IMG/VR virus record: IMGVR_UViG_3300023192_000859
Location: 1-6,015 of that record
Length of the DNA stretch: 6,015 nucleotides
Reading direction: 5' to 3' (one strand)
Under the pieces are notes generated by a model, which worked only from the letters and a program-made list of their open reading frames with translations, was not told where the DNA came from and made no database searches. Below, in pieces: positions 708 to 6,015 of the stretch (position 1 is its first letter; every line of letters starts with the position of its first letter). The position numbers and the translations under genes are program-made.

Positions 708-1532
708 TTAAGGACTCTCCCCTTTAGATTCAAACAAGAGATTCCGTAAAGCTTCATGCCTACGATTTTCTCTACGGACTTTCGCCTCATGATAATTATC
801 ACTATCGTCATACAAGAACTGTAGTTCTTGATGGTCAAAGAATTCATACAACCTTTCTGGGTGGGTACTAAACCCCATCCAGGTCATAATGTCTATACCG
901 AATCCAAGTTGGGTAGCAGTAATTCTAGATGTTAACCCTAACAAATGCCCGGTGTCTCCATGAAACAAACCTCCACCAGAGTTCCCGAATATGCTAGGAG
1001 CATTCTGCATCAGGTATGATTTCTGGTCAATGATTTCACGAAGATATGTTAGGTTACCTGGACTTGGGAAAGGGTCATGAAGTAAAGAACATCCACAAAC
1101 CCATACAGGATCAGTTACTTGTAGTTCTTTTATCTCTTCCTTAGGGATAATACTAGCTACATTCCTCATAGGTCTAGTATTGTTTAATTGCACCGCAGCT
1201 ATATCATGATGCTTATCATAAGCAATGATTTGTGCTGTAGTAGAATTAGCGGAGACTACTTTGCTCCTATCGTAATCAAAGACTTCAATACGAACTTCCT
1301 CTAGTACATCAGTCTTTACATCTTTCTTTAAGACGTTATCCCATTGTTCGGAAACTTTAATTGCTCCATCAATAACATGTTGACAAGTTAAAGCAATATT
1401 AATAAAATCACCTGGTTTATCAGGGTCTTCTTCACTATAAACTAAGACCCCACTTCCCCCTGCATTTCCTGCCAAGACTTTAGTAACGGGATACAAAACT
1501 TTCTCATGAATTTCTATCTGTGATAAACTCAT
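708..1532 (-). CDS. Trypsin-like (S1, HtrA/Trypsin_2-type) serine protease, no signal peptide or PDZ domain evident
   Basis: Motifs GSGVLV, LTCQH (His52), HDIAAVQL (Asp110), GNSGGGLF (Ser185) and LLGL. Strong RBS AGGAGG at 1540-1545. Confidence 0.93.
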   Translation of the reverse strand: MSLSQIEIHEKVLYPVTKVLAGNAGGSGVLVYSEEDPDKPGDFINIALTCQHVIDGAIKVSEQWDNVLKKDVKTDVLEEVRIEVFDYDRSKVVSANSTTAQIIAYDKHHDIAAVQLNNTRPMRNVASIIPKEEIKELQVTDPVWVCGCSLLHDPFPSPGNLTYLREIIDQKSYLMQNAPSIFGNSGGGLFHGDTGHLLGLTSRITATQLGFGIDIMTWMGFSTHPERLYEFFDHQELQFLYDDSDNYHEAKVRRENRRHEALRNLLFESKGESP

Positions 1533-2230: not shown

Positions 2231-2698
2231 TTAAATTACAATAAATCCTGACTCACATTTATATAATCCCTTTCCCATTTGCTTAGTGACAATCATATCA
2301 TTTTGTGGTTCAAATAATTCGGCTGTGCCATCAGCGAAGACCACACAATTATAAGCGTGGCTCCCCGAATAGTCAACCACCAATCCCACATTGTTTAAAT
2401 GAAATCGCCTATCCATCCTAGCTTTAAAGCTAAAGGCAAAATTATCACAATCATATTTTTCTTTTACGAAACGTTTCTTGTCTGTCCAATCCCACCTGAT
2501 TATAGCATCGAAGTCAAGGCGAGTGCAAGTCCAATACTTATTGTCTAGAACTTTTCTCTTCATTCCCACATTCATTATCTTAGCATTAATTAATTGTTGT
2601 GCTATCCATACTGTATCATGTTCTACTAAAGGTTCTGATAATTCAGGTGGGGTAATTAACTTCTTTATAGCTAAAACTTTATTAGTTATTATTCCCAT
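2231..2698 (-). CDS. Papain/transglutaminase-like cysteine peptidase (resembles the MOA agglutinin C-terminal domain type)
   Basis: YDCDNFA (Cys84), SHAYN (His114) and LFEPQND (Glu130), with upstream DxxY motif (LDNKY). Overlaps the upstream gene by 10 nt. Confidence 0.8.
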   Translation of the reverse strand: MGIITNKVLAIKKLITPPELSEPLVEHDTVWIAQQLINAKIMNVGMKRKVLDNKYWTCTRLDFDAIIRWDWTDKKRFVKEKYDCDNFAFSFKARMDRRFHLNNVGLVVDYSGSHAYNCVVFADGTAELFEPQNDMIVTKQMGKGLYKCESGFIVI

Positions 2699-2886: not shown

Positions 2887-3199
2887 TTTTATTCCCACCC
2901 CCTGTTTTTTCAATTGCATGGTCTTTCAAGTCTTTAATGAGAGTAGTAAGAGCTTTATCTAAACTCCTTTTAGTAGTAGTTAGTTTGTCTGCTAGATCTA
3001 GATCTTCTTCAGCACTTAGCTTACGATCTCTAAGAGCATCTACAACTGCTATAACAATCATTCCCGTATCTCTTCCTGCATCCATAACATGAGTAACCGT
3101 TTCTTTGTATCTAGTCAAATTTTTCTTTACTATAAAAAACCCTAGTACATCCATCCCTACAAAAATAATCTTATTTAGTAGAGTTCTATTAACTACCAT
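2879..3199 (-). CDS. Helical hypothetical protein, 106 aa, moderately hydrophobic N-terminus (start revised to ATG 3199)
   Basis: AAGGAAGGAAG directly upstream of ATG 3199. Segment IIFVGMDVLGFFIV and motif VDALRDRKLSAEE, of the A-x2-D-x-K-I/L-T/S-x-E-E type often seen in small phage membrane-associated proteins. Confidence 0.75.
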   Translation of the reverse strand: MVVNRTLLNKIIFVGMDVLGFFIVKKNLTRYKETVTHVMDAGRDTGMIVIAVVDALRDRKLSAEEDLDLADKLTTTKRSLDKALTTLIKDLKDHAIEKTGGGNKNA

Positions 3200-3392
3200 C
3201 ACTTCCTTCCTTACAACTACAGTTACTGCCCCCACAAGAACACATATCTACAGACCACATATCAATCTTATTAGGACAATCACAGATGTCACATTCACAC
3301 TCACACCCTATTTCACACTCACATAAACCCTTTAATGAATACATATTATTTTCACAATCACAATCCGCAGGTACATCAAAATCAGTTGCCAT
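3189..3392 (-). CDS. Acidic Cys-rich metallothionein-like protein, 67 aa
   Basis: 13 Cys, all in CxC or CxCxC motifs, 15 Asp/Glu, no His. RBS AAGGAGTGGAG before ATG 3392. Confidence 0.75.
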   Translation of the reverse strand: MATDFDVPADCDCENNMYSLKGLCECEIGCECECDICDCPNKIDMWSVDMCSCGGSNCSCKEGSDGS

Positions 3393-3409: not shown

Positions 3410-3541
3410 TTACCTAAACTTTCCACCAGTATGAACAGTCTTACCTTGTTTATGGCATGGGCCACACATTGTTCCCGCTTTAGTAGTCTTAGCGTGTTGC
3501 TTTCTCTTACAACCAGGACATCTTACCCAACTCTTTTTCAT
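3410..3541 (-). CDS. Basic zinc-ribbon microprotein, 43 aa (MKKSWVRCPGCKRKQHAKTTKAGTMCGPCHKQGKTVHTGGKFR)
   Basis: Hand translated. CPGC-x14-CGPC, ATGA overlap with the upstream gene, GGAG upstream, ends in TAA TAA TAA. Confidence 0.75.
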   Translation of the reverse strand: MKKSWVRCPGCKRKQHAKTTKAGTMCGPCHKQGKTVHTGGKFR

Positions 3542-3690
3542 TTATCAGACTCCAAAACTTTCATTCCCAATGCCCCTAATAAAGTAATACACCCCGTAGT
3601 AATTTCAATATGCCCTAAATCTAAGGAGACTATTGCGATAACTCCTAAAATAATGATACATATCAAAATTTGGGGGCGTAAATTTTTCAT
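3538..3690 (-). CDS. Small two-helix membrane protein, 50 aa, holin-like topology (MKNLRPQILICIIILGVIAIVSLDLGHIEITTGCITLLGALGMKVLESDK)
   Basis: Hand translated. Two hydrophobic segments, basic N-terminus, charged C-terminus. Starts 3 nt after the upstream stop and its stop overlaps the next ATG. Confidence 0.75.
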   Translation of the reverse strand: MKNLRPQILICIIILGVIAIVSLDLGHIEITTGCITLLGALGMKVLESDK

Positions 3691-3693
3691 CCT

Positions 3694-3876
3694 CTAACCT
3701 ACGATATATAAATTATAATCGAACTTGTCATCTACGGATGGGGGTGGACAGCCATTGTTTGTCACATATGTATAATATGCCATAGAATAATGTTTGTGTT
3801 GTATTTTGCTTACTATACGAGCTAGTGCAATAAAAGTTCCCGCAACACCGATACCAAAACATATACTACCTATCAT
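3694..3876 (-). CDS. Small protein with N-terminal transmembrane anchor, 60 aa
   Basis: Hydrophobic residues 2-22 followed by basic residues. First ORF after the promoter. AGAAGGAGG at 3892-3900, with a long 15-nt spacing to the ATG. Confidence 0.6.
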   Translation of the reverse strand: MIGSICFGIGVAGTFIALARIVSKIQHKHYSMAYYTYVTNNGCPPPSVDDKFDYNLYIVG

Positions 3877-3967: not shown

Positions 3968-5434
3968 TTATAGGTGACCCTTATTATTCTCTAACCAATT
4001 GGAAAAAGATTTCCGTATTGGAAAAGCCACCTTTATTTCCGTAGAAAACCAAGGGTGCATATTAGTTTGCAAATCCTTATGTGCCTTAGCAGCTAGAGAA
4101 GTATCGTAAGTGGGAGCATCAGCATCTAATTTAGTTCCCAGATGTGACCCAGCTTCGTTAACAGTCCAAGGAGGTTTCATATGAACAGGAATTCCAAAGT
4201 CATCTGTTTCTGTTTCTATTACTGGAGTGTACCGCATAGCCTCAGGGGGTTGTTCAGAAGGAAATCCATACTCCCGTAGTAATTGATGATGTTCTGCTTG
4301 CCTTCCCGCAGTATTAAATAAAGTTGCAAAGGTACCAGCCATGTCTTTTTTCGATGACGGTTTAACTTGTTTAGCCATCCATTCCAAGAAAGAGCCTGTA
4401 AAATCAATTGACCCATCTGCTTTTTCCATTAACATAGTAAACTCCCTTCCTTCATCAATAGTTGGTGATTCATCTACAGGAGAAAAAAGTTTGCAATACA
4501 TATGTTCTGCAATCATTCCTTCTACTATATCACAAGTTTGGTCTGCTTTATTAAAAAATTTACATGTCCCACACATGATTCCATTTCGTTTCTCTACATC
4601 AGTGGCATCCCGATATCCTGAATCTACTTGAGTAACCTTTCCTTCTTCCTTGGACAAAAGGCAACTACCGTCAATACAAGTAGAGACGGCACCATTAGCT
4701 TTCAGTATCTCAAACCCAGCACTTTGATTTACACCCTTCTCACAAACTGTAACTTCTGCCAGTTCCATTTCGTCTACTTGCATATAAGGTTGTAAACCTT
4801 TCTGCATATTCTGTACTTTGGTTGCACTTCCCGCAATGGAATAACTCTTTAGCTTTCCTTCATTAACTTGATCCATAACTCGTTGGGCAATTTTTGTATC
4901 ATCCCGCAATTCTGTAATGAAGAAGAGTCCATTCTCACCTACCCCAGATTTAAAAATCTGTCCACCTTTAGAAATATATGCGGGTAATGCCCAACCTACT
5001 TGAACATCTGAATGTAATACCATTGTATTCCTGGTACGGAAGTTATTCATATACTTTTCAAAAGCTTTCTCTAGAGCTTGTGTAGTAATTAAATGGCCTT
5101 CCCTATCAATTAATTCTACAGATGCGGGGCCACCTAACACCATAGCATCGCCTTCACTCAATTTAGACATAGCTTTAGTATATGTAACATCATCTGGATA
5201 TGCTCTAGATAGAGTAATAATCTCTGCTTTAGATGCTATTCCCGCTTTAAATAAACGCTTATATTCATCAAGAGCATCTGAAATATCTTCTAAAGAAACC
5301 TTACCACTATCTTGTTTTTCAATAGGGAGGATGGTTGCATCAACATTTACAGTTTGATACATCTGAGTATTGTAGGCCCAGTTAGATGGACTAGGTATTT
5401 CTCCTACAGCAGTTTGAATTGTCTCCGTAACCAT
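3968..5434 (-). CDS. Phage prohead (capsid maturation) serine protease, HK97/XkdF-like, with internal HiPIP-like module and long N- and C-terminal extensions, 488 aa
   Basis: Residues ~98-246 carry VLGGPASVELIDREGHLI, MVLH (His141) SDVQVG, GKLKSYSIAG (Ser199) and ELAEVTVCEKGVN (Glu227). TAATG overlap with the upstream gene. Confidence 0.88.
   Translation of the reverse strand: MVTETIQTAVGEIPSPSNWAYNTQMYQTVNVDATILPIEKQDSGKVSLEDISDALDEYKRLFKAGIASKAEIITLSRAYPDDVTYTKAMSKLSEGDAMVLGGPASVELIDREGHLITTQALEKAFEKYMNNFRTRNTMVLHSDVQVGWALPAYISKGGQIFKSGVGENGLFFITELRDDTKIAQRVMDQVNEGKLKSYSIAGSATKVQNMQKGLQPYMQVDEMELAEVTVCEKGVNQSAGFEILKANGAVSTCIDGSCLLSKEEGKVTQVDSGYRDATDVEKRNGIMCGTCKFFNKADQTCDIVEGMIAEHMYCKLFSPVDESPTIDEGREFTMLMEKADGSIDFTGSFLEWMAKQVKPSSKKDMAGTFATLFNTAGRQAEHHQLLREYGFPSEQPPEAMRYTPVIETETDDFGIPVHMKPPWTVNEAGSHLGTKLDADAPTYDTSLAAKAHKDLQTNMHPWFSTEIKVAFPIRKSFSNWLENNKGHL
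4478..4639 (-). other. HiPIP-like [4Fe-4S] domain within the prohead protease (residues ~266-319)
   Basis: KVTQVDSGYRD...CGTCKFF...TCDIVEGMIAEHMYCKLFSP gives Tyr274 plus C288-x2-C291-x9-C301-x12-C314, with the aromatic and V-x-G-x-I positions typical of small HiPIPs. Confidence 0.72.
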
Positions 5435-6015
5435 TAACCATTAACTCCCCAGATTACTCCACTAACAGTAGGAGTACCCGAAGCAGATATAACAGATACT
5501 TTATCTCTAAAATCTACGGGGAAATTAGATTCATAAGTAGCTCCCGCTAATACTGATATTCCCGTACTAGAGGAAGCAATGGTATCAAAAGCTACATACA
5601 CAATTTCAGCACTGGTACCTGATTCATTCTTAATCTGTATACCACGTATAACAGACATAGCAGGACGCTTTCTAGAAGTAGAAGCATTGGCAGTTCCCGA
5701 CCATTCGTAATTCAATCCAGACGCTCCATCAACATAAGTAGATACAGCATTAGTATCTTCCCGTACTTCAAACATAATCTTATCAGTATACCAATCAATG
5801 TTATGGTTAGCAGCACTAACAACATAAACTCTATACGCTGCTGCCGTAGTACTTCCTGCTACTGAATAAGAAGCCGTAATACGTGCAAAGCTAGTGGTTA
5901 GGTCAGTATCGGCAGAGGTAGCCAATTCAGTTCCCGAAGCATCAGTAATCTGTATCTTAACACTCCCTGACGCAGAAGCTCCCCTAACTTCACATTGAGC
6001 CGTTATGTGTTGAGG
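5434..6015 (-). CDS. Ser/Thr/Ala-rich beta-sandwich virion-type protein, 5'-truncated (carbohydrate-binding-module-like region plus small C-terminal beta domain)
   Basis: The frame stays open upstream of the track's TTG 5925 to the window edge (PQHITAQCEVRGASASGSVKIQITDASGTEL...). Beta-strand pattern ending WYTDKIMFE, then YVDG...WSGTANASTS as seen in phage structural proteins. Adjacent to the prohead protease. Confidence 0.65.
   Translation of the reverse strand, partial: PQHITAQCEVRGASASGSVKIQITDASGTELATSADTDLTTSFARITASYSVAGSTTAAAYRVYVVSAANHNIDWYTDKIMFEVREDTNAVSTYVDGASGLNYEWSGTANASTSRKRPAMSVIRGIQIKNESGTSAEIVYVAFDTIASSSTGISVLAGATYESNFPVDFRDKVSVISASGTPTVSGVIWGVNG

What the first reader, a model, noticed from the sequence alone, without database searches (positions are those of the whole stretch)
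4478..4639. Prohead protease fused to a HiPIP-like high-potential iron-sulfur domain
Seen: just after the protease domain lies K-x7-Y-x13-C-x2-C-x-FF-x6-C-x-IVEGMI-x5-C-x2-F. Known: small HiPIPs such as Acidithiobacillus Iro have (from memory) Y...C-x2-C-x2-F-x5-C-x-VV-x-G-x-I-x4-W-C-x2-F and are normally Tat-exported periplasmic electron carriers. Here Tyr replaces the Trp before the last Cys and there is no signal peptide. Inference: an Fe-S module is built into the head maturation protein. It could be an iron- or redox-dependent checkpoint on capsid maturation, or Fe-S cargo packaged into virions. I do not know of a characterised example, but cannot exclude that such fusions already exist in databases.
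Basis: partly seen in the sequence, partly recalled or inferred. Interest (0 to 1): 0.85.

Follow-up and report, generated by a model that had tools for sequence, protein, structure and literature searches.

The report
Iron-sulfur module in viral head protease
The enzyme that matures this marine virus's capsid contains a small domain that is a true relative of bacterial high-potential iron-sulfur proteins. The same pairing recurs in several unrelated phage head proteases, which points to an unstudied metal cofactor in capsid assembly.

Summary
Residues 266-319 of the 488-aa prohead protease (window 3968-5434, minus strand) carry K-x7-Y-x13-C-x2-C-x9-C-x12-C-x2-F exactly as described.

It is not a chance motif:
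- A profile of 35 homologous modules finds only HiPIPs at the top of the PDB (PioC, E 6.6e-7).
- The same profile matches Tat-signal HiPIPs at hhalign probability 99.1% (E 7.6e-19).
- The AlphaFold model (core pLDDT about 90) matches only HiPIP structures: all 16 Foldseek hits.
- The four Cys, one Gly and one Ile are invariant down to 26% identity.
- dN/dS of the module is 0.09.

The module is a cassette on disordered linkers between the protease domain and a conserved C-terminal region. It is present in 93 of 120 relatives and was lost at least twice. The virus is a marine tailed virus whose only cultured relatives are haloarchaeal viruses (magrovirus-like), and their protease lacks the module.

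HiPIP-like modules are also fused to XkdF-type, Mu gpI-type and DUF2213-type head proteases, and sit N-terminally in Pontimonas phage phiPsal1. I found no paper describing this.

Metal binding and function are untested. My best reading is a [4Fe-4S] accessory bead carried into the prohead.

The parts
3968..5434 (-). Prohead (head maturation) protease gene, 488 aa including the inserted module
   Evidence: ORF. Pfam Peptidase_S78 24.6 bits against a cut-off of 21, and phrog_23555 head maturation protease 1e-15. 628 homologues. Top structural matches of the full-length model are herpesvirus assemblin proteases.
5153..5434 (-). N-terminal region, residues 1-94: helical from about residue 52, the first 45 residues low confidence
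   Evidence: AF2 per-block pLDDT and DSSP. dN/dS 0.13.
4700..5152 (-). Protease domain, residues about 95-245, with invariant H141-S142-D143 and S197-Y-S199-I-A-G-S203 motifs
   Evidence: Invariant columns of A1. pLDDT 75-92. dN/dS 0.058. That H141 and S199 are the catalytic residues is inferred from motif resemblance, not tested.
4640..4699 (-). Disordered linker, residues 246-265, holding the nearly invariant C253-x-D-G-S-C258 motif (4661-4678)
   Evidence: pLDDT below 50 for residues 243-264. C253, D255, G256, S257 and C258 are at least 90% conserved, including in homologues that lack the module.
4475..4639 (-). HiPIP-like module, residues 266-320. Putative cluster ligands C288 (4571-4573), C291 (4562-4564), C301 (4532-4534) and C314 (4493-4495). 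Aromatic shell Y274, F293, F294, Y313, F317. Invariant G306 and I308.
4430..4474 (-). Second disordered linker, residues 321-335
   Evidence: pLDDT below 50 for residues 322-332. Length is variable, and long disordered inserts occur here in the 600-850 aa forms P0053 and P0058; the 1100-1300 aa forms P0121 and P0129 are extended after the C-terminal motif instead.
3971..4429 (-). Conserved C-terminal region, residues 336-488, with a motif of the type GR-x-AEHHQLLREYGFPSE ... KPPW-x-VNEAG. Presumed docking or scaffold-like part.
   Evidence: Consensus and invariant columns R378, H382, G390, P392, R401, P404, E407, P422, N426, G429. Kept in all long and short forms. No Pfam family. The role is inferred only.

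Best explanation
The segment is a true HiPIP-fold domain of about 55 residues. It was inserted as a cassette, on flexible linkers, between the catalytic domain and the conserved C-terminal region of the prohead protease of a marine tailed virus of the halovirus/magrovirus kind.

Most likely sequence of events: the host Fe-S assembly machinery loads a [4Fe-4S] cluster onto C288, C291, C301 and C314, shielded by Y274, F293/F294, Y313 and F317. The holo-domain then travels with the protease into the procapsid. There it acts as an accessory, cluster-stabilised, proteolysis-resistant bead that helps position or restrain the protease, and possibly stays behind as an internal capsid protein. It does not act as a soluble respiratory electron carrier.

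Shown here: the motif, the homology, the predicted fold, the cassette nature, the conservation, and the recurrence of the pairing with head proteases. Inferred: metal identity, packaging and role. The HiPIP cage is the most oxygen-tolerant [4Fe-4S] environment known (general knowledge). That suits an aerobic host and a particle that must persist in oxic seawater.
For: Homology:
- PDB profile search puts five HiPIPs on top: PioC 6.6e-7, R. marinus HiPIP 8e-4, 1isu 9e-3.
- hhalign against 17 Tat-signal proteins, 16 of which hit Pfam HIPIP: probability 99.1%, E 7.6e-19, with Tyr, four Cys, V-x-G-x-I and [WY]-C all in register.
- 6 of 73 family members reach Pfam HIPIP at E<=0.01, best 8e-6.

Fold:
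- Domain model pLDDT 80.5, core about 90.
- All 16 Foldseek PDB hits are HiPIPs; PioC has TM 0.70 and rmsd 2.2 A over 54 residues.

Constraint:
- C, C, C, G, I, C are invariant in 35 sequences down to 26% identity.
- dN/dS is 0.089 for the module against 0.058 for the protease domain.

Cassette on linkers.

Association with head proteases beyond this family:
- XkdF type: P0159, P0252, P0177.
- Mu gpI type: P0181, P0188.
- DUF2213 type: P0162.
- S78 with an N-terminal module in phage phiPsal1.

- BFVD hits described as XkdF, prohead protease and SppA/ClpP-class protease.

Precedent for a [4Fe-4S] cluster of unknown function in a phage virion protein: lambda gpL (PMC10721106).
Against: - No metal data of any kind.
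- AF2 does not model the cluster and I could not read coordinates, so Cys convergence is inferred from alignment to HiPIP ligands only.
- The window protein alone gives no Pfam HIPIP hit at E<=1.
- The module is dispensable in some lineages: a clade of 16, plus P0120, plus P0110 nested in a 99% supported module-bearing clade.
- The conserved Tyr is Leu in one clade.
- Packaging or retention in the capsid is not shown for any member.
- HiPIP-like modules are also fused to non-protease enzymes (RNase H-like, HNH, phosphatases), so the link may be to packaged proteins in general, or to nothing specific.
Confidence: 0.5

Rival explanations
1. Redox or iron checkpoint: the cluster state (holo/apo, or 2+/3+) switches the protease on or off, so that capsid maturation depends on host iron or redox status.
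For: The module is fused repeatedly and in both orientations to head proteases of several families. It is tethered directly next to the catalytic domain. How prohead proteases are kept inactive before assembly is generally unsolved (general knowledge).
Against: The module was lost at least twice, with the protease and C-terminal region otherwise intact, so it cannot be obligatory. HiPIP clusters are built to be inert to O2 and stay in one state in the cytoplasm (general knowledge), which makes a poor sensor. No predicted contact with the protease domain; both linkers are disordered.
Confidence: 0.15
2. Packaged cargo: the linkers are cut by the protease, the Fe-S bead stays in the mature capsid, and it is delivered with the DNA or simply makes the virion an iron carrier.
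For: The module has flexible linkers on both sides. HiPIP-like modules also occur in multi-domain proteins of the polyvalent type: 2H-SAK+InPase, D12 methylase+XkdF, LMW phosphatase. That class is proposed to be packaged and processed by C-terminal assemblin-like peptidases (PMC5512222). The HiPIP cage would survive oxic seawater (general knowledge).
Against: No cleavage sites identified and no virion proteomics. A folded cluster domain cannot pass a tail channel without unfolding and losing the cluster (inference).
Confidence: 0.15
3. The fold is HiPIP-derived, but it binds Zn or forms disulfides and serves only as a small rigid knuckle.
For: Four-Cys sites are often misassigned between Zn and Fe-S. 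The neighbouring linker has further Cys motifs: C-x-D-G-S-C, and a C-x-C-x-C mini-motif in module-less relatives. This hints at a general need for a Cys-metal knot at this position.
Against: The aromatic shell typical of HiPIP cluster cages is kept: Y/L, F-F, [WY]-C-x2-[FYH]. No zinc-finger structure appears among sequence hits below E 0.1 or among fold hits. The Cys spacing matches HiPIP ligands one to one.
Confidence: 0.15
4. Auxiliary metabolic gene: the module is released as a soluble HiPIP that feeds electrons into host respiration or phototrophy.
For: It is homologous to electron carriers. Standalone signal-less HiPIP-like genes exist in phage-like contigs and in Synechococcus phage S-SRM01.
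Against: No Tat signal, and an internal position in a cytoplasmic structural protein. No partner redox genes in 20 kb around the gene in relatives. The fusion partner is a capsid protease.
Confidence: 0.04
5. Chance cysteine pattern or a mis-called ORF.
For: None beyond the failure of the single sequence to hit Pfam HIPIP.
Against: E-values of 6.6e-7 and 7.6e-19, conservation, dN/dS and fold. 356 IMG/VR loci encode relatives of the protein.
Confidence: 0.01

Closest known systems
PioC of Rhodopseudomonas palustris TIE-1 (PDB 6xyv) and other small HiPIPs
   Same: Size of about 54 residues. A Tyr upstream, C-x2-C, a third Cys followed by [ILV]-V-x-G-x-I, an aromatic residue before the fourth Cys and an aromatic three residues after it. 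Predicted fold: TM 0.70, rmsd 2.2 A.
   Different: No Tat signal and not periplasmic. It is an internal domain of a viral structural enzyme. Tyr replaces Trp before the last Cys in the window's clade. 12 rather than 13 residues between the third and fourth Cys. No redox partner in the neighbourhood.
HK97-type (Pfam S78) prohead proteases, and the protease of Haloarcula virus HVTV-1 (gene 119), the nearest cultured relative
   Same: Catalytic domain: 31% identity over residues 91-252 with HVTV-1. Assemblin-like fold. Position in a head gene block with an HK97-fold capsid protein.
   Different: After the protease domain HVTV-1 has a long acidic tail and no Cys module. In the window's lineage the protease gene lies downstream of the capsid gene, with two genes between them.
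Prohead protease of Pontimonas phage phiPsal1 (MG835450, AUV61415)
   Same: An S78 protease that also carries a HiPIP-like module: C-x2-C-x15-C-x12-C-x2-W, A2-profile E 4e-6, Pfam HIPIP E 0.014.
   Different: The module is N-terminal (about residues 62-118), roughly 140 residues before the protease domain. The host is bacterial (actinobacterial). It is annotated only as prohead protease, and the phage was lost (PMC6106888).
Lambda gpL and related tail tip proteins with a [4Fe-4S] cluster
   Same: An Fe-S cluster in a structural or morphogenetic protein of a tailed phage, with function still unknown (PMC10721106).
   Different: A different fold and ligand pattern, an oxygen-sensitive cluster, located in the tail tip and not the head. 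No homology.
Polyvalent proteins of phages (Iyer et al. 2017, PMC5512222)
   Same: Some HiPIP-like modules sit in such multi-domain proteins together with a C-terminal assemblin-like/XkdF peptidase, e.g. P0177 and P0158.
   Different: The window protein has a single enzymatic domain. The paper does not mention any Fe-S or HiPIP domain.

Membership tests
HiPIP (Pfam PF01355) | Four Cys ligands with spacing C-x2-C-x(8-16)-C-x(12-14)-C | tested here: met
   C288-x2-C291-x9-C301-x12-C314. All four are invariant in 35 homologues and aligned to the four Cys of PioC, 3h31, 1isu, 3hip and 2hip.
HiPIP (Pfam PF01355) | Aromatic cage: a Tyr about 13 residues before the first Cys, an aromatic after C-x2-C, [WY] before the last Cys, and an aromatic at +3 | tested here: met
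   Y274, F293/F294, Y313 and F317 in the window. The corresponding columns are conserved in A2 and aligned to the Y, F and W-C columns of Tat-HiPIPs. Tyr is Leu in one clade.
HiPIP (Pfam PF01355) | Score above the curated Pfam threshold (22 bits) | tested here: not met
   No HIPIP hit at E<=1 for the window protein or its excised domain. 6 of 73 relatives hit at E<=0.01, best 8.1e-6. Profile methods do establish homology.
HiPIP (Pfam PF01355) | HiPIP fold | tested here: met
   Predicted only. pLDDT 80.5, and all 16 Foldseek PDB matches are HiPIPs, with TM up to 0.70.
HiPIP (Pfam PF01355) | Tat signal peptide and periplasmic location | tested here: not met
   The domain is internal, at residues 266-320 of a 488-aa protein without a signal.
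HiPIP (Pfam PF01355) | [4Fe-4S] cluster cycling 2+/3+ at high potential | not testable with these tools
   Needs expression, Fe/S analysis, UV-vis, EPR and voltammetry.
HiPIP (Pfam PF01355) | Soluble electron carrier between membrane redox complexes | tested here: inconclusive
   No redox partner genes within 10 kb on either side in relatives. The context argues against it but cannot exclude it.
Caudovirus prohead serine protease (Pfam S78, HK97 gp4 type) | Profile match above threshold and assemblin-like fold | tested here: met
   PF04586 24.6 bits against a cut-off of 21. All 73 aligned relatives hit it. phrog_23555 1e-15. Herpesvirus proteases are the top fold matches.
Caudovirus prohead serine protease (Pfam S78, HK97 gp4 type) | Conserved His and Ser catalytic residues | tested here: inconclusive
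   H141 and S199/S203 are invariant in 73 sequences. Their assignment as catalytic rests on motif resemblance only.
Caudovirus prohead serine protease (Pfam S78, HK97 gp4 type) | Location in a head morphogenesis gene block | tested here: met
   In relatives L081-L083 the capsid protein gene (PF17236) lies about 1.4 kb upstream on the same strand. That capsid protein matches only archaeal virus capsid proteins in the phage collection.
Magroviruses (viruses of Marine Group II archaea / Poseidoniales) | Capsid protein and protease whose only cultured relatives are haloarchaeal tailed viruses at about 30% identity; marine metagenomic origin; genomes of about 65-100 kb | tested here: inconclusive
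   The similarity pattern matches the description in PMC5434244. Related contigs reach 52-97 kb. No replication module or host link was seen. The four hits in reference MAGs are labelled Nitrosopelagicus, Dehalococcoidia and 'bacterium'.

The most novel reading that the evidence does not exclude
HiPIP-type [4Fe-4S] modules are a general, so far unrecognised accessory of head maturation proteases in tailed viruses of both bacteria and archaea. They were recruited independently by at least four protease families and are carried into the procapsid. There they would either make capsid maturation depend on the cluster (iron or redox state) or remain in the virion as oxygen-stable Fe-S cargo. In the second case, abundant oceanic viruses would be a distinct pool of protein-bound iron.
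Probability: 0.3. Interest if true: 0.85.

Novelty: new variant of a known kind. Interest (0 to 1): 0.66.

Why it matters
How prohead proteases are targeted, timed and disposed of is poorly understood, and no cofactor has been implicated. A conserved iron-sulfur domain that several unrelated head protease families acquired independently would give a concrete handle on that problem: spectroscopy, Cys mutants, module deletions.

It would also add a second, head-located case of Fe-S clusters in phage particles, beside lambda gpL.

This lineage is widespread in marine metagenomes: 628 protein clusters and 356 IMG/VR loci. Surface-ocean iron is scarce, so a structural protein that spends four iron atoms per copy implies strong selection. 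If the module is retained in virions, it bears on how much iron marine viruses hold.

It also shows that the HiPIP fold, regarded as a periplasmic bacterial electron carrier, has a large signal-less, mostly viral branch. The module profile matched 1389 clusters.

Tried and rejected
- Pfam on the window protein and on the excised domain: no HIPIP hit at E<=1. This is a sensitivity limit of a single sequence and was resolved with profiles.
- phrog_6304, E 0.0018: too weak and without annotation.
- blastn of the whole window against cultured phages: nothing.
- tblastn of the domain against cultured phages: four weak hits. The Microviridae 'peptidase' hits are spurious, since the protein has no Cys motif. 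The Vibrio phage hit was not pursued. Only phiPsal1 is real.
- tblastn of the standalone module P0163 against cultured phages: nothing.
- Burkholderia phage BgManors32 DUF2213 protease: no module.
- Search for a standalone HiPIP-like gene that might replace the module in module-less loci: none within the fetched flanks.
- Contexts of small standalone homologues: contigs too short (P0200, P0141) or uninformative (P0163, in a block of small genes of a phage-like contig).
- Host assignment through reference genomes: inconclusive.
- Cluster names: none.
- Literature: no paper combines HiPIP with prohead protease, capsid or cyanophage. The magrovirus papers and the polyvalent-protein paper do not mention it.
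- I could not read model coordinates, so Cys-Cys distances were not measured.

Full report
**1. The observation**

The window is a whole 6015-bp IMG/VR contig (IMGVR_UViG_3300023192_000859), 37.5% G+C. Its longest ORF, 3968-5434 on the minus strand, encodes 488 aa.

The rest of the protein is a prohead protease:
- Pfam Peptidase_S78 scores 24.6 bits against a cut-off of 21.
- phrog_23555, head maturation protease, scores 1e-15.
- The full-length model's best structural matches are herpesvirus assemblin proteases.

**2. Is the motif a HiPIP relative or a chance Cys pattern?**

The single sequence fails Pfam's HIPIP model (no hit at E<=1). Searched against all PDB sequences, however, its only significant hit is the 54-residue HiPIP PioC (E 1.9e-4), with the Tyr and all four Cys aligned.

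I built a module alignment, A2, from 35 homologues taken from the window and IMG/VR loci (26-82% identity to the window). In it the four Cys, G306 and I308 are invariant. As a profile:
- The top five PDB matches are all HiPIPs: PioC 6.6e-7, Rhodothermus marinus 8e-4, 1isu 9e-3, 3hip, 2hip.
- Against 17 Tat-signal proteins, 16 of which are Pfam HIPIP members, hhalign gives probability 99.1% and E 7.6e-19 over 58 columns.
- 6 of 73 full-length relatives reach Pfam HIPIP on their own, best 8.1e-6.

The AlphaFold model of the module has mean pLDDT 80.5 and about 90 in the core. All 16 of its Foldseek matches in the PDB are HiPIPs; PioC has TM 0.70 and rmsd 2.2 A over its whole length.

Among 18 close relatives the pooled dN/dS of the module is 0.089. 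The protease domain gives 0.058 and the C-terminal region 0.160.

Homology to HiPIPs and functional constraint are therefore established as far as computation can go. Cluster binding is inferred from them.

**3. Anatomy**

The full-length model shows four parts:
- a confident protease domain, about residues 50-235;
- a disordered linker, 243-264, that holds a nearly invariant C-x-D-G-S-C motif;
- the module, 268-320, at pLDDT about 80-85;
- a second disordered linker, 322-332, and then a helical C-terminal region of modest confidence.

Across homologues the module behaves as a clean cassette between two conserved flanks. The C-terminal motif (GR-x-AEHHQLLREYGFPSE ... KPPW-x-VNEAG) is always kept. 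This holds even in the longer forms (about 600-1300 aa), which carry extra disordered G/R/K/P-rich stretches either between the module and that motif or after it.

**4. Distribution within the family**

- 93 of the 120 best homologues and 75 of the 80 best IMG/VR loci carry the module.
- Most have Trp before the last Cys; the window's clade has Tyr.
- I built a tree on the protease and C-terminal columns only. Module-bearing proteins occupy all deep branches.
- Module-less proteins form one clade of 16, plus P0120, plus P0110 nested inside a 99%-supported module-bearing clade. That needs at least three changes, best read as an ancestral module lost repeatedly.
- Some module-less forms carry a short C-x-C-x-C stretch at the same place.
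- No standalone HiPIP-like gene was found in the fetched flanks of module-less loci.

The module is therefore useful but not indispensable.

**5. What virus is this?**

In the collection of cultured phages, the protease matches only haloarchaeal tailed viruses: HVTV-1, HCTV-5 and HCTV-1, about 31% identity over the catalytic domain.

In closely related contigs the capsid gene lies about 1.4 kb upstream. It matches only those viruses and a Methanofastidiosa virus.

This is the pattern reported for magroviruses of Marine Group II archaea (PMC5434244). Related contigs reach 52-97 kb. I found no direct host link, so 'magrovirus-like archaeal virus' is an inference. The HVTV-1 protease has an acidic tail and no Cys module.

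**6. The wider picture**

The module profile matched 1389 clusters at E<=1e-3 among 1.84 billion representatives. Apart from this protease family they include:
- canonical Tat-signal HiPIPs;
- many signal-less proteins of 53-75 aa;
- tandem two-module proteins of 170-190 aa;
- fusions.

The fusions include three further head-protease families:
- XkdF/S78_2: P0159, P0252, P0177.
- Mu gpI type: P0181 with two modules, and P0188.
- DUF2213 (phrog_530 and phrog_12864, head maturation protease): P0162 with two modules.

Pontimonas phage phiPsal1 has an S78 protease with the module at the N-terminus.

A fold search of predicted viral structures adds proteins described as XkdF, prohead protease and SppA/ClpP-class protease. 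It also adds a 67-aa protein of Synechococcus phage S-SRM01 that UniProt already labels with the HiPIP profile. I did not verify these further.

Other partners are RNase H-like, HNH+PAP2, 2H-SAK+InPase, LMW phosphatase, zeta-toxin-domain, HAD and ParB-like proteins. Several of these are of the 'polyvalent protein' type, which is thought to be packaged and processed by C-terminal assemblin-like peptidases (PMC5512222).

**7. Mechanism**

Shown: a constrained HiPIP-fold cassette on flexible tethers inside a prohead protease, and a recurrent pairing with head proteases.

Inferred: a [4Fe-4S] cluster on the four Cys; entry into the procapsid with the protease; and a role as an accessory, cluster-stabilised bead that positions or restrains the protease or stays behind as an internal protein.

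I prefer this to a strict checkpoint for two reasons. The module was lost repeatedly, and HiPIP clusters are built to be unreactive. I prefer it to an electron-carrier role because there is no signal peptide, no partner gene, and the fusion partner is structural.

Zn binding remains a real alternative. My rough probabilities are:
- HiPIP homology and fold: 0.95.
- Fe-S binding: about 0.75.
- The specific role stated: about 0.4.

**8. Novelty**

I found no paper that links HiPIP domains with prohead proteases, capsids or magroviruses. The only comparable known case is the unrelated [4Fe-4S] domain of lambda gpL in the tail tip, whose function is also unknown.

The sequences themselves are abundant in databases, and a few phage proteins already carry an automatic HiPIP label. 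What is new is a variant of known parts and a recurrent architecture, not a new fold or chemistry.

Noticed in passing
window 4661-4678 (-), residues 253-258: A C-x-D-G-S-C motif in the disordered linker just after the protease domain is at least 90% conserved across the family, including proteins without the HiPIP module. The window's nearest relatives (499 aa) have an 11-residue insertion that duplicates it (E-C-D/N-G-S-C). One subgroup lacks it and has a lone Cys before the Tyr instead. It could be a cleavage site, a disulfide loop or part of another metal site.
   Followed up: partly
module-less relatives such as P0019, P0023, P0025, P0034: Where the HiPIP cassette is missing, several proteins have a short C-x-C-x-C stretch at the same position, next to the C-x-D-G-S-C motif. 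That gives five Cys within about 21 residues.
   Followed up: no
window 3189-3392 (-): A 67-aa ORF with 13 Cys in C-x-C repeats, metallothionein-like. It is conserved in a relative (55% identity over 40 residues to the 70-aa gene at L081 11965-12177). No family match.
   Followed up: partly
window 3410-3541 (-): A 43-aa basic ORF with C-P-G-C ... C-G-P-C, which looks like a zinc ribbon. It is followed by two small hydrophobic ORFs (3538-3690, 3694-3876).
   Followed up: no
window 708-1532 (-): A second protease in the same gene block: 274 aa, trypsin-like (Pfam Trypsin_2, 4.8e-11). It is syntenic in relatives L081-L083.
   Followed up: no
window 2231-2698 (-): A 155-aa protein matching the C-terminal domain of ricin-type lectins and agglutinins (PF18022, 7e-9). 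It is conserved in relatives.
   Followed up: no
window 5434-6015 (-), runs off the end: The gene directly upstream of the protease is cut by the contig end. It ends where the protease gene starts. In L081 it is 306 aa with a weak carbohydrate-binding-module-like match (PF02018, E 0.0076), possibly a capsid decoration protein.
   Followed up: partly
L081-L083 (relatives at 80% protein identity): The gene order is capsid protein, 95-aa gene, 306-aa gene, protease. The protease therefore lies downstream of the capsid gene, unlike HVTV-1 where the protease directly precedes it. A Mom-like gene lies about 7 kb downstream of the protease.
   Followed up: no
P0121-P0129, P0053, P0058: Forms of the same protease of 600-1300 aa carry long disordered, basic, G/R/K/P-rich stretches, either between the module and the C-terminal motif or after it.
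   Followed up: partly
P0141, P0145, P0148 and about 25 further clusters: A family of 170-190 aa signal-less proteins with two HiPIP-like modules. The second module ends in C-C rather than W-C. No Pfam or PHROG match.
   Followed up: partly
L093 (CAYVWD010000055.1, 87-kb contig): A relative of the protease (60% identity) sits on an 87-kb contig binned into a Candidatus Nitrosopelagicus MAG. This is either a mis-binned viral genome or a hint at a thaumarchaeal host.
   Followed up: no
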